Shown here in pieces: positions 420 through 19,200 of a stretch of DNA of 64,000 nucleotides. The position numbers and the translations under genes are program-made. The DNA comes from Botryllus schlosseri (taxonomy: Eukaryota). Position 1 is the first letter of the stretch. Every line of letters starts with the position of its first letter. The notes beneath the pieces were generated by a model that was given only the letters and a program-made list of their open reading frames with translations, searched no databases and had not been told where the DNA came from. The DNA is taken from contig CM119384.1 in assembly GCA_051294905.1 (NCBI GenBank), positions 6,696,001-6,760,000 on the forward strand. The letters are read 5' to 3'.

Positions 420-534
420 CGTCCCGGGCAAGCTGAAGTCCTTCTTGGATGACCTCCATTCGGGCAAGCTGCATCGGGAATTCCACCACGGCCCGGATCC
501 CACTGCCGACACGGGGAAACCCGCGCAGACACAG
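420..534 (+). CDS. ERP44: ERp44 (ER resident protein 44, PDI family), penultimate coding exon
   Basis: Acceptor TACAG|420 and donor ACAG|GTGCGT at 535. Translation VPGKLKSFLDDLHSGKLHREFHHGPDPTADTGKPAQTQ matches the ERp44 signature PGKLKQFxxDLHSGKLHREFHHGPDP. Upstream exons lie outside the window. Confidence 0.95.
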
Positions 535-705
535 GTGCGTCTCGCATATCGGTGTAGCCTGCGTGGTGTTCATACCTGCAACCGAGTAGATTTAGCGGTG
601 ATGCGGTTAATGCCTGTTCCCTTGGTGAATAGTAATATTGTAGCACAGAGGTTCTTACACTTATCGTGTGGAATCCTTATCTGCAAAACTTGGGAAGCTG
701 ATCAG

Positions 706-2161
706 TAGGGCGATTTTTTTTTACCTAAAAAACGGAAGATTTGACCCAAAAAATTCTAAATTTTGACATTTTTTTACCTAACGAATGCTAATTGGGTGTT
801 TTCCCAAATAATGTTAGAATTGTACTACTTGTCTTCATTTTTGGTTCGAACTGTCTGTCCTTACGAAGTAGTTTGCCCTCAAAAATCGAAATCTGGCCCT
901 ATGAAGAATTCCAGTAGCTACATCATCTATTATGGTGAAAATAATTACAATTTGTTGTAGTATAACGAAAGATACTTTCCTACATTATCGGGTAGAAAGC
1001 GTCTGCCCTTACTATTTGCCAAGAATGGAGAAAGAATGTTCAATAGGGCTCTTCAAAAATGACTTTTTTTCTCAAATCGTACTGGCTACTTGATAAAATT
1101 GTAAGGTTACCTAATTTAAGCCTACACACAAAATTTGGTTCAATTCCAACCAGTAACCGCTTTGCTACACGAGATGAAAGTTTCTATTTATTATATAAAA
1201 ATAAATAATAAAAAATTTGAAAATTTTCTGTTCACCCCATGAAAGTGTTAGGCTGTCAATAGAAACTATGCTCACCAAATTTATTTCAATTCCAACCAGT
1301 GGAAGCGGAGTTATTGCCGTCGAAAAATTTGGAGTTGAATAAAATAGTATTTACGGTGAGCAGAACTATAATAAATAAACAAAGAATCGGTCACCGTAAA
1401 TACTATTTTATTCAAATCCAAATTTTTCGACGGCAATAACTCCGCTTCCACTGGTTGGAATTGAACCAAATTTGGTGAGCATAGTTTCTATAGACAGCCT
1501 AACACTTTCATGGGGTGAACAGAAAATTTTCAAATTTTTTATTATTTATTTTTATATAATAAATAGAAACTTTCATCTCGTGTAGCAAAGCGGTTACTGG
1601 TTGGAATTGAACCAAATTTTGTGTGTAGGCTTAAATTAGGTAACCTAACAATTTTATCAAGTAGCCAGTACGATTTGAGAAAAAAAGTCATTTTTGAAGA
1701 GCCCTAATGTTCAACTGTAGCAGCTGTCGGCTGACAACACCGAAGTTGTGCGTACACTGCTCGCGACACGCCGTATTGCTTCTGACAATGGTGTACATCA
1801 CAATTTTTCATGATGCGCTTCTTGATATAAAAACCATGCAATGCCTACGTACGCAGTCTAGCTTCACTTATGACATTGCGGCACGTTGAGCATAGCACCA
1901 CGTCAACCATGTTTCATTTGAATGTTTATGATTCACAATGAGCAGACAACGGGCCGTCTACAACGGTAGGCTTATAAAGTAGGCTACAAGCTGTAAAATG
2001 TCAAACGATATGGTCACCGACAGTGCAAAATCTACGATACAAACGATGGCGGGTTGCAAAAAAATTTCGTCTCTGTCAACAATTTTGACATTTTTTGACT
2101 TAACACAACAATTTTGACCTAATTTTGACATTTTTATTACATGTCAGAAAAAATCGCCCTA
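706..2161. mobile_element. Non-autonomous hAT element in the ERp44 intron, host of a nested foldback MITE
   Basis: TIRs TAGGGCGATTTTT (706) and AAAAATCGCCCTA (ends 2161). Flanks CTGATCAG/GTGATCAC form a degenerate 8-bp TSD. Subterminal AATTTTGACAT repeats at both ends. Confidence 0.7.
1044..1706. mobile_element. Foldback hAT MITE, copy 1 (near-perfect 663-bp palindrome)
   Basis: Arms 1044-1359 and 1391-1706 (316 bp) with a 31-nt spacer. Termini TAGGGCTCTTC/GAAGAGCCCTA; perfect 8-bp TSD ATGTTCAA. Confidence 0.92.
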
Positions 2162-2561
2162 GTGATCACCCATCTGGCGTAGTTGATGCCTAAAAGCTAA
2201 CAATGTAGCCTTACAGTTTATAGTTGTAGTGTCAACATTGACCTTTCATACCTACAAACAATTGAGTACGGTAGCCCTATTTTCGACTGCCCGATTCAGG
2301 GCATGATACGGACAGCATATATTTTTAATTTGATTTGAATCTGAAATCCGCAGCAGGATTTGGATTTGAAAATATCATCCCATTTCTTGAATATACCCGC
2401 TCATATCTACTTTTGAAGTCAATATGAGTTTCGCTCACCCGCTGCCGTCATCCTGCTATTCTCACACACGGCGTATCTTCTTTGCATGTCTTCCCATTGG
2501 TGGTGTCGCCGCACGCATTTCGCGAATCGTTTGCATGTCGTCGCCGCTCGGAAACGCGTAG

Positions 2562-2705
2562 GAGCGGAAAGTCGCGCAGCCTTCTCAAGGAAAGGTCGCG
2601 GTTAAGGAGGAGTCTAAGACGACGCCTCCCGAATCTATTTTCAAGAACCTGAAACCATCCGAACATCGATACACCGTTTTAGGCCGTAATCGGGACGAGC
2701 TGTAA
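2562..2705 (+). CDS. ERP44: ERp44 terminal exon A (47 aa, ends RDEL-stop)
   Basis: Acceptor CGTAG|GAG, phase 0, compatible with the donor at 535. Reads ERKVAQPSQGKVAVKEESKTTPPESIFKNLKPSEHRYTVLGRNRDEL*, matching the ERp44 tail PPESxFxKLxPSExRYTLLxxRDEL. Absent from the supplied ORF track. Confidence 0.93.
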   Translation, partial: ERKVAQPSQGKVAVKEESKTTPPESIFKNLKPSEHRYTVLGRNRDEL

Positions 2706-3815
2706 TTTCTTTTACTTCGTTTTGGGATGAATACACCCGCTGAGATATTTATATCTTAAGGAATCCCAGGAAACTGTGGGCTATTTAGAATTGGGAACGC
2801 GATTATTTTTGTAAGACCTACGTGATGTTGGGAACTGAGACATGACGTGATGGTGCGCATGTGATAACTTGTATGTCGAAAGAGCTTATTTATATATTTC
2901 TTCTATGCCGTAACGTAGCGGGAATTGATCGGTTGAAGCCTTGTCGTCGCGATATGAAGCCAGATATGATTTTGTTGGGGTTTGATATGTAAAGTATATG
3001 TCTGTACGTTGCTCAAGGATGGTGGTATGATGGTTGGTGCCAAGAGATCTATCGTATTATTCTGTTGCTACGCCCGCGTATGCTACTGTTATGTCATTGT
3101 GATATGAATGGTGCCAATGCGCACGTGGAAGTGTCAAATCAACAAATATATGAACTGAAGGCAATAATTCGAATTCGCGGCGTTTTGTGTGCAAGTGGAA
3201 CTTGGTGAGCTTGGATTTGTTTGGAGGAGTATGCTTGTCTGCTATCCGACAGGTGGTATACTTCAGGGCTCTACCTACGATTCTACGTTTTCGCTGCTCT
3301 GAGTTGTCAGTCTTGGTGCACCACGATCAAGGGAATGGAGGTTGGGGTGGGTCGCGGTATGACTAAAATTAGATCTATGCGTCTGGCAGGAGCAACCAGC
3401 GACTGAAGTGAAGGCAATCTCCTGTATTCGATGGGTCCCGTGTATATGCACACTTATGTAAAAACTTACATAAAAACGACTGGCCACCATCAACGGCGTA
3501 GCCAAGGTGCGAATGTTCCAGCGTTTTTGACCTGAACATCATGTTATCTGAAATTTCTGATTCCACATTTTCTCATCATCTGTGGTTTTTGGTTACGAAA
3601 ATGTCTCGCCAGTCGTCACACATGCTTCTCGGAGCTATCGAAGCATGAATATATGACCTCAAATATATTCGTATGTGCATAATTTTATACCGCTAGACGC
3701 CCCTTAAAGTATCCCGAATGCATCGATAAGAAATTTCACATCCCGCCAGGTGGCGTAATTCGTGTCATGTCAAGCATGAGCAATTGAGCATTGCAAGAGC
3801 ATTGAGCATGTGCTG

Positions 3816-4228
3816 TAGTGCGGAGCATGGACCGGAGCCGGATTGGATATCCGGCCGGATTTTTACAATGTTGACCGGATCGGAGCCGGATCAGTATTTT
3901 TCCTGTTACGGCCGGAGCCGGATCACTACTTTTTTGATCCGGCCAGAATCTTTAGGGATCAGCATAACTTATAACTATATAACTACCAACCAACCACACG
4001 CAAATAACCACCAAGCCAGTCTGAACATAAACGAGGCATATTTATCAATTCACGGAACCTCCGTACCGAGTAGGGCCGGATTTCTGGCCGGACTTTTTCA
4101 TTTTTGGCCGGAACCGGATTGGAGCCGGATCAGTACTTTTCCTGATGCGGCCGGATCGGAGCCGGATCAGAGAATTGAACAGCCGGATCGGAGCCGGACC
4201 AGAGAATTTGTCGATCCGCTCCGCACTA
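3816..4228. mobile_element. hAT MITE with CCGGATC/CCGGAG subterminal repeats
   Basis: TIR TAGTGCGGAGC/GCTCCGCACTA; perfect TSD ATGTGCTG (3808-3815, 4229-4236). Confidence 0.9.
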
Positions 4229-4781
4229 ATGTGCTGGTGTCCGTCATAATTAACCGATAAAGTAAAATTGCTAGGCCCTCACCGACTGGTAGCATAGCAG
4301 ATAAACTGGAACTATTACCATGAATATTCTGTTTTAGCCCACCGCCCCACCAACGTTGGCTCCGGAGCTGAAGGTAAGAAGATATTACACTGATTAAAAT
4401 AACTTCCCCGGATCTCGGAAAATCATTTTTCATCGCGATCTATGTAGAATTCTAGACCGAGTAGGTCACGCGTATGGCATTTTCGGGAATGAGGGATCCC
4501 CACATTCATGAGGGAACCCCAGATTCCCAGCGTCGAGAAGTACTGCGTTGAAGTTAATCAAACGCAATTCGCCTAGCTCCCAGAAAAAGAAACTTGCGAT
4601 CATCAACCGCTCGACTGCTCGAAGTCATCTGAAAATGAATTGAAAATTCGTCTGAAGTATTTCTTCAGGTCTCAGTAACCATGTTTCGAAAAAATGTGAC
4701 GTCTAAATCTAGTCAAATTCTTCAAACCCGGTATTTTTCGAATTCATTGCTCAATATTGCTGCATATCTACTACATTGCAG

Positions 4782-4970
4782 GAAAAATTGCGCGCTCAAG
4801 GCCATGACCCCGATGAGTTGGAGCGGCAAGCCCAGGAACAACTTCGAAGGGTACAAGAGAGATCAAACAGTAATTCAGGAGAGGCCACGACTGTGAAGTC
4901 AATATTTAGGAATTTGATGCCGAGCGAACATCGATATACCCTAATGGACAGAGTTAGAGATGAATTGTGA
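4782..4970 (+). CDS. ERP44: ERp44 alternative terminal exon B (62 aa, ends RDEL-stop)
   Basis: Acceptor CATTGCAG|GAA, phase 0. Reads EKLRAQGHDPDELERQAQEQLRRVQERSNSNSGEATTVKSIFRNLMPSEHRYTLMDRVRDEL*; the last ~27 aa are homologous to exon A. Confidence 0.85.
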   Translation, partial: EKLRAQGHDPDELERQAQEQLRRVQERSNSNSGEATTVKSIFRNLMPSEHRYTLMDRVRDEL

Positions 4971-6509
4971 TTCTTGTACACCGAGTGTTTGATAGCTCAA
5001 AGATGATTTGTTCTTGACCAATATGGATTTCGTTATATTTATGTGACCCAAAGTGGTTACCACTTAAGTTATATAGACCTACGCGTAGGCTATTATGAAG
5101 AGATGGGTCAATTATGGATTTTTAAATCCAAGACCAGGCTCGTCTTTGCTAGTTGGTAGCCAACAAGATAAGGAAGACGCTAGGCCTAGTTCTGATCTAA
5201 CGCTTACAAGCCTTTCTACGCTCCGGAATATTTGAATAAGGTGACAGCTTACGGTAACTCACGTGACCTGGCCATAGACAAGCGGAATATGAACGCCTAA
5301 CATGTGTAGCATCGCGATGCCCCGAAGATACAGAGGTGGTAGCCCGATAAGCATATTGCATAGCCCGGCAACTATAGTTGTAGACGAGACATCCACAGAT
5401 GAAACCTACACGTCACGCGTCGAGAATATCGAAGTCCTGAAAACGGTCAGTAGGCCTCTGGACTATTTGGCAGCCCTGTATAAACCTACACACTCTTAAA
5501 ATACTCAGCAACCCGCTGTGATTCGTGGCTCAAATGAATAGTATTGTTTGAAGTCATGAATATCATCAAACACTCTAATTTCCGACTTATTAAAAAACTT
5601 ACACTAAAAATCGACCACAAAGAGAGCATCACTTCTTTCAAAAATCCCAAGGGACGAACAAATATCCAATCATTCCAATTTAAGAGGATTAGAGGCGAAC
5701 CATGGCCTACATTTTTCAGTTGGTGCGGCTTGCTCGCGAGTTGACACACGGATTTTATGAAATCGACAAAATTGGCACTCGCAATCTATTTCGCAAAACC
5801 AGAGATGTGCAAAACGTGTGAGATTTCAAACTCTGCTAATTCTCCCTAGCGTTTTGCAAAGAGAATTTGAAAGTTAGCTCAGAACGGTGAATTTTGTAAG
5901 TTGAAATAGAAAATCCGAGGTGTGGCGCACATTTTGTATTGGAAAAAGCAAAATGTAACTTACGGCCTATGTCAAACCGTTTTGAAAGTTCAGGACAATA
6001 AGGGACTAGTTACTAATTTAAGGTCTGTTCATATAATTAAATCGCCAGAAAACCTATGAGCAATTTGTATACAGGATTGCGGCCGAACATGAATATTCTG
6101 CTTTCGGATATTTTGCCAGCAAAATCAGGCACCGTCTTCACGATGATACTTTCTTCGCTCTCATGTCCTACGTCAGTATTACAGAAAATAATGCAACGAT
6201 ACAACGGCGTGAAAATGAAAATATGCTAGCATTATCCATCACATTTATATCAAAAGTAAAAAAGATAAATGAGAGATATTTCAACAAAATATAGTAACGA
6301 TCTTTATTCTCGCAATGGAAGCCTCAAAACCTCCATTGTTGATGACTCGGCTGCCAAAACGTTTCGCACAAAGCCACGCATGTTCTCTATAGGCTAGTGA
6401 TCGACCCGCAGCGTTGTTACAAAGCGCTATGAAATAGCCATGGACGAGAAGCACAAAATGACGCCAGATAGCGTCTTACAGGCAATATTTTCATTGTATC
6501 CCAACATTC

Positions 6510-7463
6510 AGTATTAGTTTATTAATATTTTCATCATTTCAAAACACCACAAAACCGTGATACAATGAAAACGTAGGAAGGTGTCGAAAAGACCTGGAGT
6601 AGTCTTTGAAATCAGACGCTCACCCTGGCCTAGGCTAAGTAGAAAAGAGGCATGCACACTAATTGCACAGTAGGGCTCTTCAAAAATGATTTTTTTTTTC
6701 AAATCGTACTGGCTACTTGATAAAATTGCTAGGTTACCTAATTTAAGTCTACACACAAAATTTGGTTCAATTCCAGCCAGTAACCGCTTTGCTACAGGAG
6801 AAGAAAGTTTCTATTTATTATATAAAAATAAACAATGAAAAATTTGAAAATTTTCTGTTTACCCCATGAAAGTGTTAGGCTGTCTATAGAAACGATGCTC
6901 ACCAAATTTGGTTCAATTCCAACCAGTGGAAGCGGAGTTATTGCCGTCGAAAAATTTGGATTTGAATAAAATAGTATTTACGGTGAGCACAACTATAATA
7001 AATAAACAAAGAATCGGTCACCGTAAATACTATTTTATTCAAATCCAAATTTTTCGACGGCAATAACTCCGCTTCCACTGGTTGGAATTGAACCAAATTT
7101 GGTGAGCATCGTTTCTATAGACAGCCTAACACTTTCGTGGGGTGAACAGAAAATTTTCAAATTTTTTATTATTTATTTTTATATAATAAATAGAATCTTC
7201 CTTCTCCTGTAGCAAAGCGGTTACTGGCTGGAATTGAACCGAATTTTGTGTGTAGGCTTAAATTAGGTAACCTAACAATTTTATCAAGTAGCCAGTACGA
7301 TTTGAGAAAAAAGTCATTTTTGAAGAGCCCTAATGCACAGTTGCACACTGAATGAAAAGTAGAGCAGAGAATATAAAAGGCAACCAACAAAATGAGGTGG
7401 CATGTGGCGGAAGGCGAGATCGATATGTTAGGTCGTAGTCCGATAATCCTGAAAGCTGACTAG
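6510..7463 (-). repeat. Unclassified ~270-bp interspersed repeat interrupted by foldback MITE copy 2
   Basis: 6510-6670 plus 7333-7463 is the reverse complement of 60900-61165 (shared ...GAGGTGGCATGTGGCGGAAGGCGAG... and ...AAAATATTAATAAA). Confidence 0.7.
6671..7332. mobile_element. Foldback hAT MITE, copy 2
   Basis: Highly similar to 1044-1706, with the same termini and spacer. TSD TTGCACAG/ATGCACAG (1 mismatch). Confidence 0.92.
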
Positions 7464-10200: not shown

Positions 10201-13200
10201 ACCCAACAATGTTATGTTATCGCTCTTTGTTCTTTTCCCATCTGTCTGTCAAATAGCTGAACTATACCGCTGCCGGTGACGAGATGTTATCTCCGGTTTA
10301 TATAAAATGCACAGCACATGATTGTCCGATAATAATACCCACATTCACGCATCTCGTCCGAAAATTTGAAAAAAAAACAAAAAAATCAAAAAAATCAAAA
10401 TGCTAACATTAAAATCAAAAATCAACGAAAAAAACCTGATTTAAATCACACTGATTTAAATCAGCCTGATTTAAACCAGAAGCCTAACGCCAACCTATAT
10501 CGACGTACATAGTTTGGTGCATTCAATATTTATAACCTGCAGCGTCGTCATTGACGATGCGATTGACTATGATGAGTTTGGTGATTAGCCACAGCTTCCT
10601 GGTGTATACGCGATGCTTTTGTAATGCATACTACCAGCTGACATTGTCTGCACGTCTAAGATTTCAGTCCCAGATGAACGTTAACAGTATACGCGTTTCG
10701 CAAATTAGTAGTGGAGTTTTTGAGAAATAATCCACATCTCTTCATTTCACGAGCGATTGCAGGAGTTGATGACTCTACCTCGTGTATTGCGGATGTACGA
10801 GAAGCGAGCTGAGCAGTGAGCACATATCATACACAAGTTTCTAGACCTCAAAAAATATTGGCATCCATTATTACTAGGGCAAGTTTTCGCAACTTTTGCA
10901 ACTTCTGTTTTACAGCTTCCGGCAGCTTCCTAAATACTCAGAAGTTATGTAGTATGGTGTTTTAAGCTGTCTGGACGGCTCTTATATTATAACTTTTGCA
11001 AGTTTTTTCGATTCTTCATACAACTAACGTTTTACTGGTAATATTTGGCACTATATGTAAATAGATCGCTTGATTATTTCACTGTCGTTTAAATTTGAGG
11101 TCCTTTCTGATTTGAAGTACATTCAGGCTAGACCGCCGAAAATAATATTTTCACTGGGTCAATTTTCTCAGGCTATTGATTTCATTGAAGTCACTGAGTT
11201 TTGCTACAGTGCCTTGGATACGGATCGATTCGGGTATCTCATACCCTAATAATTTCAAGGAACTTGTCTATAAATGCTACTTTTGTGAAAAATACATGCA
11301 ACTGTCCACGTATTTGAAAGCAACAAAAACCTGCCCTAATTATTACCGTTTTGATAATTTGAGAAATTCCACATTTGCCACTGCTTATTCCCTTTGAAGC
11401 TTGCTACGTATTTGGTGTGGCATAGTACTCTATAATAATATTAGTAGGAGTAATGTACTCATCAAGCCATTACGTGGTAGTGATAGTTTGATACTACAGC
11501 GAAAATCGCTGTGAAATTGTAATGTCGACACCGATGGATAAATTCAATTTTTCTCTGCATTGAGTTATGCGTTGCAGTACATAGACTCTCTGTCTATAAC
11601 TCTGTAGTTTCAGCAAATCGCCATAGGATCAAGACCATTGTTTCAATTGTGATGTAATCCGACGCTTCTCGAATTCTTACGACCTACCGATTAAGAAGTC
11701 GTGAGATGCGTATATTAAACATTTTACTGCGGTTTGATGAGTGCTGAATAAACAAACATATCGTTCACATAACCAATTTCAGTATTGTGCATTTTGAGCA
11801 AACACGACTTAGGATATTGTATTCTCATTTAACTGTAGCAAACTATTGAATTCATTAGGGGTGCCACAATTGTTGAAAAGTTTTCAAAGGGCGCCGTCCA
11901 CATAAATATCTTTGGGAAAAGTTACTCTAGCTATAAGCCTATATATGGTTACATTGAGTCAAACAACGAAACGCGTTGCAAAATATTCATCGGGAAAGGA
12001 TATCACAAACTCAGCAAAAGTTTAAGTGCGACTGTCGATAGTTATTTTTAACATTCCTTCCATGTGATAATGAAAGACCTGTCATTGACCCGTCAATAAC
12101 GGTGCATAAACTGATGCCTTTAATTCCAGACAAAAACATCTCTGTAGTCATGATCGATTGCATAACTTATCTATTGCAAATAGGCGTGAGTAGCGCGAAC
12201 CTACCACGGTTGATGTGAGTCAGAGCAAAAAGGTTTGCTGATTAGATTTTGAAACACAGATTCGTATGGGGAGAGCGATTACTAATTCCGATGGCCAATG
12301 GTTATTGGTCATGGACAATTGTACGGAGTACATTCACGATTTTATCATATATTCTCAGAATGGTACTTTGGTTGTAGCGTTGTTGTTAATAATAATAATT
12401 CTATTTTGATGTTATTTCGACTGTACTGCTGACAAAACTCTTGGTTTGGTGATAGGCCTGTGGACGCTATTGCAGTCCACGCCACATCCAAGGCAGCGCT
12501 GATGAAGAACTCAATGCGCGTGATAACTATAATTCGGATTCTAATACTCAGTCTACGCAGAGCGCAGGCACCGACGCAAGACTACTTGATATTATCGAAT
12601 GTCGCGAATTGACAATATGTGGCATAGTCCTGTACCATGCTACAGTAAGCAATTTTATTATGCACAAATTTTCGCCCTGCAAATCTGTTACCTGGTGTTG
12701 GGATGAATTGAGAATATTCTCAATACTTTCTGTTTTACCTGCTCAATAAGCAATTCGCTGCTATTTCATTGTTACGAAAATGACTTCGCCCTTTACCTGA
12801 GAGCGTCGGTACTATCTAAATATTGCGCAAGCCCTGGTTGAGCCGACCTGCATTTGACGCAAGCGACGGTCGAGAAATGTCCACTTTAGCTTAGCCGTCA
12901 CAAAGAATGGTAGAGTTGATTGGTTGTATCTGTTGCTGAAACCTAACGTTTCGGCCCTGTCACGTCTTGTTAGTCTATTGAAGTGAAGTGTAATCAAGCC
13001 ACGGTGCTGCGACCTTTAAGACAAAGACGCCCGAAGGAAACCTATCTTCAGTTCAGTCTGCACTCAGATTATTATTGACATGAACGAGGGATATGTTCGA
13101 AGGTGCTAACATGCTCTTGTATTATTACGGGTTCTGGTTCAACTGCAGTTAGTTGCTTAGCAATCATAGTGCGTCAGGTATACCTTGACTGACACGCTAA

Positions 13201-13223: not shown

Positions 13224-16200
13224 ATGGGCGGAAAGAAGACAGTGAACATAAAGGCTATTTTGATCTGTTCCGGGGCATCGTCATGTGCAGTTGTAGCAGG
13301 TTTTGCCATAAGCTTCAGTTCTGTGGCTATGGACGATTTAAGTAATGGCATGGGCGGGGAGCTGCAACTCGCATCAGAGCAAGCAACATGGTTCGGGGTA
13401 TGTAAACAGTTTTGTTCTGCGTCGGAAACCGCAATTCATTGGCTAATATAGCGACCATACAGTCAATATTACGCAGAATACTTGACTATTTCCAATTTAC
13501 CTCGCTCATTTCATCTCTAACATCCAAGGAAACTACATTTTATTTATTATTCAACAGAGCCTGCTTCCGTTGATGGCGATATTCGGTAGTCTACTCAGTG
13601 GGCCGATAATGGATTATTTCGGACGCAGAGTAGCCCTTCTCACCGTTGCGTTATCCTTCTTCGTCAGTTGGGTTCTCATGTGCCAGGCGTACGGTCTTCC
13701 TCTTTTGTTCATAGGAAGAGGACTCTCGGGATTCGCGACTGGAATGTCAACCGCTGTGATACCGGTGCGATATGAATGAATTTAGATTATTTCGTCACGA
13801 ATTTTCTCGAATTGATACAATCCTTCGGTGGTTTCACTCTGTGTTTGACGTTGGCTTTCGTCGTTTTTCGTCGTATGCGACACCAAATTATTACGTCCGT
13901 TCACATGGTGAAGCCATTCCGTATCCGAGTAGTCGTGGCGTGACAGTTGTCTCAGCGACTCGTACAAACGACTCCCTCGCATGGAATTCGCGACTCTGAC
14001 TAACAGATTGAAAGCGCGATTCGGACTGGTCATAATGTCCCTACTCCGACTCCCCATGTTTAGTGATTCAAATCCGATGCCAGCAACTTTTATAAGCCCT
14101 CGGGCATTTTAGGAATTATGTGTCGAGACCAAAAACAGGTTTAAATCGACTCTTTGAGGCCGACTTGAGAAGTAAACTGGTCATATTTTTGACTTCATCG
14201 ATTTCCTCTGAAGCTAAACTGCGACGTTATCATTTGCGACCTCTATATATAAAGTACGCTATGCAGTGCAATCGTAGGCTACACCTTGCTTTACTGGTTT
14301 TTCGGACGACCAGATATAGTTTTAGTCTGTACCAATCTTCCCGAGTCAATGTGGCGAGGCCATACACAATTCCTTTCCAAAATTGTAAATACGTCGCATA
14401 CTAATGCAGCCGCAATAGCAATAAGCACGATTCTTCCCATAATCGTCTTTACGTGTGTGCGTGTTTCGCGAATGCTGCTTTGTTCAGATGTACATATCGG
14501 AAGTCAGTCCGAGTCACTTAAGGGGCACGATGGGAGCTTCCTTCAGTGTAGCTCTGGCCCTGGGTCTCCCAATGGGTTACTGCAGTGGAATATGGCTCGA
14601 CTGGAGGCAGGTTGCTGAAATCGGAGCTACCACATGTACAGGCGTTTCGTTTCCATATTCTTAGGGCATTTACGGAATGCGATATTCATTTTAGCCTGCA
14701 TATCATTCGTGATTATCTTCATGCTGCCAGAAAGCCATTACTGGTTGATCAGGCAGGGAAGGCTGCTTGAAGCTACGAAGGCGATGGAAACGATTCGGGG
14801 ATCGTCCTTCGACATTTCCCCTGAATTTGATGATATTCAGTTGCTTCAGAAGGAGGTATGGGGTGGTTGGCGTGTTTTGTAAAATCATCTCATAGTCTCT
14901 ACGTAACGTGATTATAATGAAATACGCAGCTCAAGCATGTATGAAGGCACATATACAGCCTCCTGCGTATATACAATAACACACGGAAATGACGGCATGC
15001 GGTATTCCATGTCAAGATGTCCGACACCTTACATTCGTGACTGTACTGACAATATGTATATATGATGACTGTGCTTCCATTGTTGTGAGCTTCGTTTGTG
15101 TTTCGGTCACTGCAGAAAATGCGACATATCATCGTTTTACCATTTGCATAATACATGCGTCCGTGCTGGTTGTTGGCGCGACGATATAATAATCTCGACT
15201 GCCCTCTCTTTCCACAGTTTAATTGTGAAATTTGAGAGTAGTTTTAATTTGCACATGGCTCACCAAGTCAACAGTTCCAACAGAAAAGCTTCTTGGAGGT
15301 GCAGAACTTCAATACACAATTAAATAGTATATTCATATTGAAATGAAGCCGAACATTTTCGGCTGACACTCGTCAGGGGTAATCGTCAGTAACTAGCTGC
15401 CAGCCGAAAATATTCTGGTACATTTCAATATCAATGTACTATTCAATTCCTACAGAATAAAAGAGATTGACAGAGAAAAGCTGTTCGGAACTAGCGTCTA
15501 TAGAAAGTCCTATACCTTGACCAAGGTTGAAGTTCGAAAATTGTAATGCGTTACGGAGAAACCGATCTCGCATTAGCGATTGCTCGTTTAGTGCACATTT
15601 GTTTGTATCCCTAGTTATAACTGATATTGGCGCTCTTGCTGCATGCAAATAGAGTTTCAAGTACAGATAATCGCCTTGTTTTAAAAGATCAGCGACGATC
15701 GAATCACGTGCGCGGACATCGCGTCGAAGACATTTCTAAAACCCGTTGGCATCGGAGTCGCGTTGATGGTGTTCCAGCAATGTAGCGGCGGGAATGTGAT
15801 ATTTTTCTACGCACACGAGATATTTCGAAAAGCCGGGTTTGATCAGGGTATGTACTATGTATCTAATACTAATGTATGCATGCTGAGTTTGTCAAAAGTG
15901 GTCGTCGCCTGTAGGCCTATTCAAGTACAAGTAGAATTTCGATTTTCTAGTCGCAATTTTATAAATATTCTACTCAAGTGCAAGTAGAAGTAATAGTTTC
16001 CAAGACATGTCGAAATATCTTCAAGGGGGAGTAGAGAACGAAATTCTGAAAAGTAATCCAATATGTGGCTTCAATGAGTGGATTTGTTCGAGGGGTCGCG
16101 TGCTTTTAGAAGTCAAACGGAGGCGATTGCTTTTGAAATAGCATGGTTATTCGCGACAAACGCAACATGACTAACGGTACTACCAGTAAGTGTCATTTTC

Positions 16201-19200
16201 GGATGTAAGTTCAGTTACCATAGTAAAAGGGTACTTTTCGCAGATGGTATGGCAATTTCACTTATAAAGATGACACAAATATACTTCAAACTACTTTCTA
16301 ATTTTTAATATTTAAAGTGTAAAGTTTGACCCAAAAACTGTTTGAGTTGAAGGGGAAGCAACCCAATACCAACACTTGATTAAATGGCGCATGTAAGGCA
16401 AAACCTATAAGTACTCCTACAAAGTAGAACGCTTTCGTTACTGATCGCCTCTATGTTTTGTATATGTTGATATCAATCAAGTCTGTTGGCAACCTGTTCG
16501 AGTACTGTAATACATATACCATGTCACCAGTCGTTCATATATGTTTTTGCAGAAGCAATCGCTAGTGTTTTAGCGAGCGGCATGCAAGTGTTCTCTATTG
16601 CGTTCGCGACAATACTTGTTGATCACGTAGGCCGCCGCAGGCTTCTGTGCTGTTCAGCACTTGGAATGGGAATATGTCACCTCTTCATCGGCGCCTGCAT
16701 GTTTTACATTAACGAAGGTATGTTTTTAACAAGTCACAATCAAATCGTCCAGTAATCAGAACGATCAGTATAATGTAACTGTATAAACCGTATACTGGCA
16801 CTCTGGCAGAGATGACCGGCAACGAGATACTTTCTTTTACTTATACTTGAGTAGCAATACCGACTACTTTGACCACCTCTTGGTAGTCAGGCGTATAGTA
16901 CACCTACACCGTTATTCCATTTTGCATTGCTCACTCTATTATTATGATACTTTTTCGGCGCATGTAATACTATATCTTAGCCTATATCCAATGTGGTGGG
17001 TCACATGCATACTCAAGCTACTATACCCATCGTACATCATATAAATATACTGTCGAATCTATTCCTAATGCGTATTTACATGGATGTGATTCCTTGTCCA
17101 TGGGAAGGGGGTTGACTCACACAGTACATAGTACATAGGTCTGTATATTTAAATGAGCAATATATTCATTTTGCCATCCAGGCGAAATGACCAGTGTATA
17201 ACAGCGAGTGTCTCAGTGACGAGGCGTTGAAAATAGCTAGTAATTCAAAATAGCGAGCTTATTAGGGACAGTGTTAAATTGCATACGGTTAGTGTTAGGT
17301 GCATGGTCAGGTTAGGGTTAGGTTAGATTTGAATGAATGACTATCCTGACACTCGCCTCGATAATGCCTCGATATTATTGCAACCGCTCTTTTAAACTCG
17401 CTGCATTGACTCTTACTGTCGTTACACATACATAGCTTATACGCCCATGCTATACCTGTCGAAATAAACGCGGCGTCGTATCCCTTAGACATTTTGACAT
17501 GTTTCAACTTTTCTCTTAATATGTCTTTCATTTGCTTGGGTGAAACCGACAGATCTGTAAGCTGCAATCAAGGTATATTTGAATGGGCAGACTGTTGAGA
17601 GAAAAGGCAGTGTTTCGGAACAACAACCTTCCACTGGAATTATAATCAACGATGAAGCGAACTAGAATGCAAAATTATATATAGTTTACCCGCTGATGTG
17701 AGCATACGCGACCACGCGAGACGAAACCACCGCCTTCGGTCGACGCATGCAGGATTATGCACTTGAGCAATCCGGTTAATTAAAAAATGTCATAAGTTTC
17801 TCCTGAAAGCTTTACCTTTTGCGCTAACCATTCTTAGCAACATACGCATATAAATCCGACTGATGGTTACGACCACTAAGTACTGAATCTGTTATTTCAT
17901 TTTCGCTGCGGGAATCAGAACAAAACTTTAAAGGAAACTTGTTTTGTTTGTGGCTTATATACATCCGGCACATTTCTCAATTCCTAATGTGCTTTTGTAC
18001 CGTCGATTGGATAAAAACAGCAGGGGTTGTTTTCTGGGCGCTCCATATTAGTCCATCGTCGGTTGAAATTAATTTTAGACAGTTGGAATGAATGATGCCG
18101 TTTCCCCAGTAGTTCCATAATGTTTTGGTGATTTCCGCCATTTGTGCATTGCAAATGGATATATATATATATGGTATTGCGATAATTCCGAACTGAACAT
18201 GAGCGATGAGTAGAGCACGTTCAACAGCCGCACAGAGTAAAAACTTATTCATACGTTGCAATCGGCTATGATTTTTATTACGAGTTAGATCTCTGAACCC
18301 TTCAAAAATTTAGATGAAACCTCGGGGAATATAACCGCAATATGCAAGTTCCTAGCGAACTGGATCTCTAGATTCGATAAATCGCGCATGTGATAGGCTG
18401 ACGTTCACTTGCCGGTATCTAGTTAAATCACGATGTCTGTAACTTATTACCCCAGAAGCATATATTTCGGTTGTCGTAGACTTGTACTGTGGCGTTTGTA
18501 CATTTGCACATGCACACTATAATGTCTCTATACTTATGTTATTACAGGAGTTGCAACTTGTTATATCCGTGGTTCGCATATAAGAGCCTCTGTATTTTTG
18601 GTATGGAAGTGTGATAAGTAAATAAGAATGATTACGCATGTGGGATCTATGGCCCCAGAAATATTTCATTACTGCAATGTTGGGTTCCGGCTATCGTACA
18701 ATCTAAATTCCGCCCGTCGCCCATACACACACATTAAAAACTGCTCCCACTAAATAATCACCTATCAGGCGCGCTCCCCGCGACCCCCAGTCGGTGCGCG
18801 TTGCTGACTCTGATTAAGGTAGTTCTCGAACGATTAGCGGTCACCAGTTTATGTGGATAACATTACTGGTCGGGGTCTTTGTGTTTCTCCACCCATCTAC
18901 ACTGCCACTTTTTTTATAATCCAACTTGTACTTGGCATGCATATGAGTAGGAGTTTAATTTTGAGGTGGGATTTGAAGCGTGTAGCGCAGTGGTTCTTAA
19001 CCTTATCTCCAGCGCCCCTCAAGGGGTGATTTGGATATTAGAGGGGGTGGAAACGCCAAGGGCGCGAAATGGGGGGGCGCTTGGCTCAGAGGGGCGGTAT
19101 GGGGGCGCTGACGAAAGATGGCGTCTCAGTAGATAATGTAGTAGAGGCTTATGATTATATAATAGCTTCTTTGAGGTACAGAACTTCAATATACAATTGA

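What the first reader, a model, noticed from the sequence alone, without database searches (positions are those of the whole stretch)
420..4970. ERp44 has two alternative, duplicated terminal exons giving two different RDEL-ended C-tails
Seen: one phase-0 donor (535) and two phase-0 acceptors (2562, 4782), each opening a stop-terminated exon with SIFxNLxPSEHRYT...RDEL. Tail A (47 aa) keeps TTPPES and is Lys-rich. Tail B (62 aa) has TTVKS and a charged, helix-like linker containing GHDPD, which echoes the upstream HGPDP. No copy of the HREFHH exon lies between them, arguing against a second gene. Established: the ERp44 C-tail is the pH- and zinc-regulated lid that covers the client site and the RDEL signal. 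Inference: alternative last-exon choice could produce isoforms with different lid dynamics or retrieval.
Basis: partly seen in the sequence, partly recalled or inferred. Interest (0 to 1): 0.7.

Follow-up and report, generated by a model that had tools for sequence, protein, structure and literature searches.

The report
ERp44 gene with two alternative tails
This sea-squirt gene for the secretory-pathway chaperone ERp44 ends in two alternative, anciently duplicated coding ends; the second, kept across ascidian orders, lacks the proline known in human ERp44 to lock the regulatory tail shut, so the two protein forms are probably gated differently.

Summary
Exon 420-534 (donor GT 535-536) is followed by two intact, stop-terminated, phase-0 tail exons: A at 2562-2705 and B at 4782-4970. 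The gene is single-copy.

The interpretation of alternative last exons is supported, with one correction. The B path is therefore most likely 534>4338 and 4373>4782.

The organism is an ascidian. The same order (exon n-1, A, small B exon, B terminal exon) occurs in:
- a relative's genomic contigs
- Styela clava, as RefSeq isoforms X2 (A) and X1 (B)
- Clavelina lepadiformis, as isoforms X2 and X1
- a further ascidian-like contig

Phallusia has a B-like tail in a protein record. Against the nearest relative, synonymous sites are saturated (pS 0.74-0.93), while pN is 0.12 for A, 0.15 for B and 0.15 for the constitutive exon. Both tails are therefore under selection.

B tails replace the near-universal PPE(S) motif with T[VAI]K. 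In human ERp44 the first proline (Pro353) plugs the zinc-binding histidine cluster.

I found no literature on this arrangement.

The parts
420..534 (+). Penultimate common ERp44 exon (hinge with HREFHHGPDP histidines); donor GT at 535-536, phase 0
   Evidence: It is single-copy in the genome. It aligns to the relative's mRNA L013 1137-1220 and to ERp44 proteins.
1036..1713 (.). Young high-copy foldback (MITE-like) repeat inside the intron between exon n-1 and exon A
   Evidence: More than 40 genomic copies at 93-97% identity, matching on both strands.
2562..2705 (+). Terminal exon A: 47 aa plus TAA; ancestral-type tail with TTPPES...RDEL; purine-rich, weak-looking acceptor (ggaaacgcgtag|)
   Evidence: Orthologues are L011 3159-3302, L013 1254-1397 (spliced mRNA), Styela L014 15181-15330 and Clavelina L015 5381-5542. 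pN/pS is 0.123/0.743 against the nearest relative.
2706..3815 (+). Presumed 3' UTR of the A transcript (end not determined); no AATAAA or ATTAAA hexamer
   Evidence: Inference from position. Hexamer scan. The relative's A mRNA has at least 729 nt of 3' UTR, also without a canonical hexamer.
3816..4229 (.). Dispersed repeat of about 415 bp (CCGGATCGGAGCCGGATC-rich) between exon A and the B module
   Evidence: At least 40 genomic copies at 87-93% identity. Internal direct repeats shown.
4338..4373 (+). B-specific micro-exon B1: 36 nt, PTAPPTLAPELK, phase 0/0, strong sites (ctgttttag| and AAG|gtaaga)
   Evidence: It is the only AG...GT open segment between 535 and 4781 that ends in E[LIV]K. It is homologous to the Styela clava exon L014 17685-17717 (PPLPSLTPEIK), which is included in RefSeq isoform X1, and to L010 1454-1486 (PPLPTLDPSLK).
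4782..4970 (+). Terminal exon B2: 62 aa plus TGA; charged helical linker (G[HR]DPD..E.QAQ) then lid TTVKSIF..LMPSEHRYTLMDRVRDEL
   Evidence: Orthologues are L010 1595-1780 (76% aa identity, introns unalignable) and Styela L014 18704-18892. pN/pS is 0.153/0.879. There is no in-frame ATG upstream, so it is not a stand-alone gene.
5589..5594 (+). First canonical poly(A) hexamer (ATTAAA) downstream of exon B; candidate end of the B transcript
   Evidence: Hexamer scan only. No read evidence.

Best explanation
The window holds the 3' end of the single-copy ERp44 gene of an ascidian.

After the common hinge exon (420-534) the transcript can end in two mutually exclusive ways:
- (A) It splices to exon 2562-2705 and ends there. 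This gives the ancestral-type C-tail, with a disordered Lys-rich linker and the TTPPES...RDEL lid.
- (B) It skips A and splices to micro-exon 4338-4373 and then to exon 4782-4970. This gives a 74-aa tail with a Pro-rich stretch, a charged helical linker and a variant lid (TTVKSIF...DRVRDEL).

The B module arose by tandem duplication of the terminal exon. It has been kept under purifying selection in ascidians, probably since before the split of Stolidobranchia from Phlebobranchia plus Aplousobranchia (about 390 Mya).

Both tails keep the lid core (S-I/V-F..L/M.PSEHRYT) and the retrieval signal. Tail B lacks the PPE motif. In human ERp44 the first proline of that motif (Pro353) sits between the three zinc-binding histidines in the closed state and must move for the tail to open.

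My inference is that the B isoform has a differently gated lid, easier to open or more easily loaded with zinc. Choice between the ends would be set by competition between the weak acceptor and poly(A) site of exon A and the strong splice sites of the B module.

Shown: the anatomy, single-copy status, conservation, selection, and isoforms annotated in relatives. Inferred: use of both ends in this species, the gating difference, and the mode of regulation.
For: Anatomy and reading frames.

Single copy with only two tail exons genome-wide.

The remaining ERp44 exons lie upstream, and no other ERp44 exon lies between or after the tails.

Conservation in relatives:
- A relative's genomic contigs carry n-1 plus A (L011) and B1 plus B2 (L010). 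Tail identity is 74-76% aa while the introns cannot be aligned.
- Styela clava XP_039251819 (X2, tail A) and XP_039251818 (X1, micro-exon plus tail B) map to one locus in the order n-1, A, B1, B2.
- Clavelina lepadiformis isoforms X2 and X1 have the same layout.
- ENA contig L012 has the same layout with all phases 0.
- The Phallusia mammillata protein P0207 has a B-like tail.
- The assembled transcript L013 of a close relative shows n-1 spliced to A.

Selection: by Nei-Gojobori counts against the nearest relative, pN/pS is 0.153/0.879 for B, 0.123/0.743 for A and 0.151/0.931 for n-1.

The PP motif:
- 132 of 140 complete ERp44 tails in my sample have PP before S.F.
- Six of the eight exceptions are tunicate B tails.
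- The role of Pro353 is described in PMC6363758 and PMC13384778. The mapping of PPES onto human P353-S356 comes from the HMMER alignment to 2R2J.

AlphaFold2 on the Styela isoforms:
- The B linker forms helices 374-382 and 387-408 at pLDDT 88-95.
- The A linker is disordered at pLDDT 40-52.

Splice sites: the acceptor of A is purine-rich in this species, in L011 and in Styela, whereas the B1 sites are strong.
Against: - There is no read-level evidence from this species.
- The RefSeq isoforms are automatic models, and I could not inspect their support.
- No short B-tail fragment from an RNA assembly was found in the 34-108 aa range. B may therefore be rare or restricted in expression.
- No canonical poly(A) hexamer follows exon A.
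- B lids from different orders are no more alike (46-64%) than A and B lids are (mean 61%). A single origin therefore rests on shared motifs and layout, not on a tree.
- AlphaFold gives low confidence for the lid in both isoforms, so it says nothing on docking.
Confidence: 0.8

Rival explanations
1. Exon B (4782) is joined directly to the donor at 535 without the micro-exon, giving a 62-aa tail. The micro-exon is unused or only optional.
For: Both 534>4782 and 534>4338>4782 keep the frame, since all phases are 0. Micro-exons are often cassette exons.
Against: - The micro-exon is conserved in three stolidobranch species with intact strong splice sites.
- It is part of the annotated Styela isoform X1.
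- Clavelina X1 also has an extra B-specific exon.
- pN/pS is about 0.3-0.4 on only 11 codons.
Confidence: 0.12
2. The B module is a conserved-looking but unused relic in this species, so only tail A is made here.
For: There is no expression evidence for B in this species. The only relative transcript recovered carries tail A. No B fragments from RNA assemblies were found.
Against: - The open frame, stop codon and all four splice sites are intact.
- pN is 0.15 against a saturated pS of 0.88, the same as the constitutive exon.
- A relic would not survive a divergence at which introns are unalignable.
Confidence: 0.05
3. The B exons belong to a separate small downstream gene. The first Clavelina annotation called them this way, as a 115-aa product.
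For: Clavelina record CAK8673491.1 (P0276) is an ab initio 115-aa protein made of the B exons alone.
Against: - In this window no in-frame ATG precedes B1 or B2.
- No signal peptide is available to such a product, and an RDEL end is pointless without ER entry.
- The phases match the ERp44 donor.
- RefSeq joins the B exons to ERp44 in two species.
Confidence: 0.02
4. The two-tail arrangement arose more than once. Stolidobranchs on one side and phlebobranchs plus aplousobranchs on the other duplicated the last exon independently.
For: Cross-order B-B lid identity (46-64%) is not higher than A-B identity (mean 61%). The B1 exons of the two groups (PPLPSLTPEIK versus LIGYHVPSPRV...) are not clearly alignable.
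Against: - All B tails share T[VAI]KS in place of PPES.
- All except the Phallusia record share a hydrophobic residue before [RK]DEL.
- The order (A upstream of B), the two-exon B module and all-phase-0 junctions are the same wherever a locus was available.
- There is no sign of within-species homogenisation: same-species A-B identity is 57-64%.
Confidence: 0.2

Closest known systems
Human/vertebrate ERp44 (ERP44/TXNDC4; PDB 2R2J, 5GU6, 5XWM)
   Same: - CRFS active site.
- The a-b-b' thioredoxin-like body.
- HPLHH and HREFHH histidine cluster.
- Flexible C-tail whose S.F..L.PSE.RYT segment covers the client site, and a terminal RDEL.
- Tail A keeps the PPES motif (human P353-S356).
- The Styela orthologue aligns to 2R2J at E = 6e-147.
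   Different: - The papers I searched describe one tail and mention no isoforms.
- Here a second, alternative tail exists. It lacks the Pro353-equivalent plug and has a structured helical linker plus a private micro-exon.
Styela clava ERp44-like isoforms X1/X2 (XP_039251818, XP_039251819) and Clavelina lepadiformis X1/X2 (XP_076821582, XP_076821584)
   Same: Orthologous loci with the same exon order and the same A-type and B-type tails. These are the direct counterparts of what the window encodes.
   Different: - They are automatic database models with no published description that I could find.
- The linker sequences differ, and the Clavelina and Phallusia B linkers are long and Ser/Thr/Lys-rich rather than a charged helix.
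Alternative last exons (ALE, splicing-coupled alternative polyadenylation) made by tandem exon duplication
   Same: A shared donor and two terminal exons of common origin, each with its own stop codon. The upstream exon has the weaker acceptor.
   Different: - Here the two poly(A) sites and their regulation are not demonstrated.
- The distal choice is a two-exon module rather than a single exon.

Membership tests
ERp44 (PDI-family chaperone of the early secretory pathway) | CRFS active-site motif in the a domain | tested here: met
   The upstream exon (L005 2085-2234) reads ...FVNFYADWCRFSRML....
ERp44 (PDI-family chaperone of the early secretory pathway) | Three thioredoxin-like domains a-b-b' with overall sequence similarity to solved ERp44 | tested here: met
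   Eight upstream exons map collinearly on ERp44 proteins and on the relative's mRNA. Close orthologues carry PF00085 and PF13848. The Styela orthologue matches 2R2J at E = 6e-147.
ERp44 (PDI-family chaperone of the early secretory pathway) | Histidine cluster at the b'/C-tail border (human His299, His328, His332) | tested here: met
   HPLHHLGK is in the exon at window -2487..-2353, and LHREFHHGPDP is in exon 421-534. Residue roles are taken from PMC6363758.
ERp44 (PDI-family chaperone of the early secretory pathway) | C-tail lid segment plus C-terminal RDEL/KDEL-type signal | tested here: met
   Both tails carry SIF.NL.PSEHRYT...RDEL.
ERp44 (PDI-family chaperone of the early secretory pathway) | PP(E)S motif whose first proline (human Pro353) plugs the His cluster in the closed state | tested here: met
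   The gene meets it through tail A (TTPPES). Tail B does not: it reads TTVKS, and every tunicate B tail lacks PP at this position.
Alternative last exons | One upstream donor compatible in phase with two terminal coding exons, each ending in a stop | tested here: met
Alternative last exons | Transcripts of both forms exist | tested here: inconclusive
- In relatives, form A is seen in assembled mRNA L013.
- Form B is seen only in RefSeq models and a Phallusia protein record.
Alternative last exons | A separate cleavage/poly(A) site after each terminal exon | tested here: inconclusive
   There is no AATAAA or ATTAAA between 2706 and 4337. The first one after B is ATTAAA at 5589. Styela and Clavelina do have hexamers after A. 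There are no 3'-end data.

The most novel reading that the evidence does not exclude
Ascidians have kept a second ERp44 isoform for roughly 390 million years whose regulatory tail lacks the proline plug of the zinc-binding histidine cluster and carries a rigid helical spacer. This would be a natural 'unplugged' ERp44 with a different zinc/pH threshold for opening, client capture and KDEL-receptor retrieval. It would be switched on by last-exon choice in particular tissues or under particular secretory loads.
Probability: 0.3. Interest if true: 0.7.

Novelty: new variant of a known kind. Interest (0 to 1): 0.55.

Why it matters
In the papers read here (PMC6363758, PMC13384778), ERp44's C-tail is a pH- and zinc-operated lid. 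Those papers treat it as a single tail and mention no isoforms.

A conserved, genetically encoded choice between two lids, one of them without the Pro353-type plug, is a ready-made natural experiment on how the plug and the linker set the opening threshold. It would also show that an animal lineage tunes early-secretory quality control by alternative splicing rather than by gene duplication.

For genome annotation, it shows that the B path needs a 36-nt micro-exon that is easy to miss.

Tried and rejected
**Read evidence**
- In one search they were masked with N. In local scripts the window served only as a passive BLAST subject.

**Protein searches**
- Short-query searches with tail B and tail A returned only genomic ORF fragments of relatives and no transcript fragments.
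- The representative search with exon n-1 gave mostly exon-sized fragments and only A-type tails.
- A profile search found no protein of this species itself.

**Other checks**
- blastn between the window and the relative's contigs aligned nothing outside the exons, so UTR and intron conservation could not be used.
- dS could not be estimated because synonymous sites are saturated, so pN/pS proportions are reported instead.
- AlphaFold did not resolve lid docking in either isoform.
- The 'GHDPD echoes HGPDP' idea is rejected as a conserved histidine feature: Styela has GRDPD.
- The separate-gene and relic readings are rejected (see the rival explanations).
- Literature searches for ERp44 isoforms or tunicate ERp44 found nothing relevant.
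Full report
**1. What is in the sequence**

The stated features are all present.
- An acceptor AG at 418-419 opens an exon (420-534). Its in-frame codons 421-534 read VPGKLKSFLDDLHSGKLHREFHHGPDPTADTGKPAQTQ. It ends in phase 0 at a GTGCGT donor (535-).
- Exon A: acceptor AG 2560-2561, then 2562-2705. It encodes 47 residues ending TTPPESIFKNLKPSEHRYTVLGRNRDEL, followed by a stop.
- Exon B: acceptor AG 4780-4781, then 4782-4970. It encodes 62 residues ending TTVKSIFRNLMPSEHRYTLMDRVRDEL, followed by a stop.

**2. One gene, not two**

The window is G000:C14:6696001-6760000 of a 495.5-Mb genome.
- A six-frame search of the whole genome finds the hinge exon once. It finds tail B only at itself and, weakly, at tail A.
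- The other ERp44 exons, including FVNFYADWCRFS, lie 2.3-8 kb upstream of the window in collinear order. Nothing ERp44-like lies between or after the two tails.
- No in-frame ATG precedes the B exons.

**3. The organism and its relatives**

A profile search placed the gene among tunicate ERp44s.
- The closest hit is an assembled transcript of a related species (P0162/L013, about 90% aa identity). In it the hinge exon is spliced to an A-type tail.
- The closest named relative is Styela clava. Its RefSeq records give isoform X2 (415 aa, A tail ...TTPPESIFKKLEPSEHRYSLLKRSKDEL) and isoform X1 (439 aa, B tail ...GRDPDEIEKQAQ...TTAKSVFKNLMPSERRYTLMDRVKDEL).
- Clavelina lepadiformis likewise has X2 (A tail) and X1 (B tail ...STIKSIFVQMKPSEHRYTLLNKIRDEL).
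- A Phallusia mammillata protein record has a B-like tail.

**4. The same layout at every locus examined**

| Locus | Exon n-1 | Exon A | Small B exon (B1) | B terminal exon (B2) |
|---|---|---|---|---|
| Styela clava (L014) | 13556-13672 | 15181-15330 | 17685-17717 (33 nt, PPLPSLTPEIK) | 18704-18892 |
| Clavelina (L015) | 5091-5228 | 5381-5542 | 6179-6250 | 6456-6701 |
| Unnamed ENA contig (L012) | ends 9092 | from 10103 | candidate 12799-12867 | 13520-13681 |

In L012 all phases are 0. Genomic contigs of a nearer relative carry n-1 plus A (L011) and B1 plus B2 (L010).

**5. The missed micro-exon**

Guided by Styela, I scanned the window between 535 and 4781. I looked for AG...GT open segments of 24-81 nt ending in E[LIV]K.
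- There is exactly one: 4338-4373, ctgttttag|CCC ACC GCC CCA CCA ACG TTG GCT CCG GAG CTG AAG|gtaaga, which reads PTAPPTLAPELK.
- It matches PPLPSLTPEIK in Styela and PPLPTLDPSLK in L010 (1454-1486).
- The B path is therefore most likely 534>4338 and 4373>4782, giving a 74-aa tail.
- A direct 534>4782 join is also in frame and cannot be excluded.

**6. Selection**

Between the window and the nearest genomic relative, only the exons align and the introns do not. Nei-Gojobori counts:

| Exon | pN | pS |
|---|---|---|
| B | 0.153 | 0.879 |
| A | 0.123 | 0.743 |
| Constitutive hinge exon (n-1) | 0.151 | 0.931 |

Synonymous sites are saturated, and both tails are constrained about as strongly as the common exon. 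Exon B is not a decaying copy.

Same-species A-B lid identity (57-64%) is no higher than cross-species A-B identity. There is therefore no sign of gene conversion.

**7. What consistently distinguishes B from A**

- In my sample of 140 complete ERp44 tails, 132 have PP just before S.F. Six of the eight exceptions are the tunicate B tails.
- The HMMER alignment to human ERp44 (2R2J) puts TTPPES on human SSPPES. The first proline is therefore human Pro353.
- According to PMC6363758 and PMC13384778, Pro353 sits between His299, His328 and His332 in the metal-free closed state. Its displacement on zinc binding drives the opening of the C-tail.
- B tails have T[VAI]K at this position.
- Apart from the Phallusia record, they also share a hydrophobic residue before [RK]DEL.
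- In stolidobranchs they share a conserved charged segment, G[HR]DPD.[LI]E[RK]QAQ.
- AlphaFold2 on the Styela isoforms predicts two helices for the B linker (374-382 and 387-408, pLDDT 88-95). The A linker is predicted disordered (pLDDT 40-52). The lid itself has low confidence in both isoforms.
- By my own count, net charge is about +3 for tail A and about -1 for tail B.

**8. Likely mechanism**

Shown: the anatomy, single-copy status, conservation, selection, and isoform models in two other ascidians.

Inferred:
- Both ends are used in this species.
- The choice works by competition. The acceptor of exon A is purine-rich in this species, in L011 and in Styela. Its poly(A) site competes with the strong splice sites of B1 and B2.
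- The B isoform, without the proline plug and with a stiff spacer, opens or binds zinc at a different threshold.

**9. Age**

If the B modules of stolidobranchs and of Clavelina, Phallusia and L012 are orthologous, the arrangement predates their split, dated at about 389 Mya in PMC5899321.

The case for one origin rests on shared diagnostic residues, order and exon structure. Lid identities alone do not separate one origin from two.

**10. Limits**

I have no junction, strand or 3'-end data for this species.
- In local scripts they were present only as a passive BLAST subject or were masked.
- No canonical poly(A) hexamer lies between exon A and the micro-exon.
- I could not inspect the evidence behind the RefSeq models.
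- I found no paper on ERp44 isoforms of this kind or on tunicate ERp44.

**11. Verdict**

This is a conserved variant of a well-known chaperone. It is already visible as automatic isoform models in two ascidians but is undescribed in the literature I could search. It gives a concrete, testable link to the Pro353/zinc gating mechanism.

Noticed in passing
window 1036-1713 and 6664-7335: There are two copies of a young foldback (MITE-like) element of about 680 bp. One lies in the intron before exon A and one lies 1.7 kb after exon B. The genome holds more than 40 copies at 93-97% identity.
   Followed up: partly
window 3816-4229: A dispersed repeat of about 415 bp, rich in CCGGATCGGAGCCGGATC units, has at least 40 genomic copies at 87-93% identity. 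It is inserted between exon A's presumed 3' UTR and the B micro-exon.
   Followed up: partly
window 2706-4337; L011 3303-3848; L013 1398-2126: No AATAAA or ATTAAA hexamer follows exon A here, in the nearest relative's genomic contig, or in 729 nt of a relative's assembled A-type 3' UTR. Styela and Clavelina do have such hexamers. The poly(A) signal of the A transcript is unexplained.
   Followed up: partly
window 2540-2561; L011 about 3140-3158; L014 about 15160-15180: The acceptor of exon A is purine-rich with a poor pyrimidine tract in three stolidobranch species. The B micro-exon has near-consensus sites. This could be the basis of regulated last-exon choice.
   Followed up: no
proteins P0219 and P0249 (Ciona intestinalis): Two Ciona ERp44 records differ by an 18-residue insert (PHIQALPEDPSAAPAVN...) directly after HHGPD. 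This suggests that the linker after the histidine hinge is also alternatively spliced in Ciona, in a different way.
   Followed up: no
protein P0004 (716 aa, representative library): This was the top hit of the hinge-exon search. It matches the query in 12 separate stretches, so it is a protein with many repeats of an HREFHH-like segment. Its origin and meaning are unknown.
   Followed up: no
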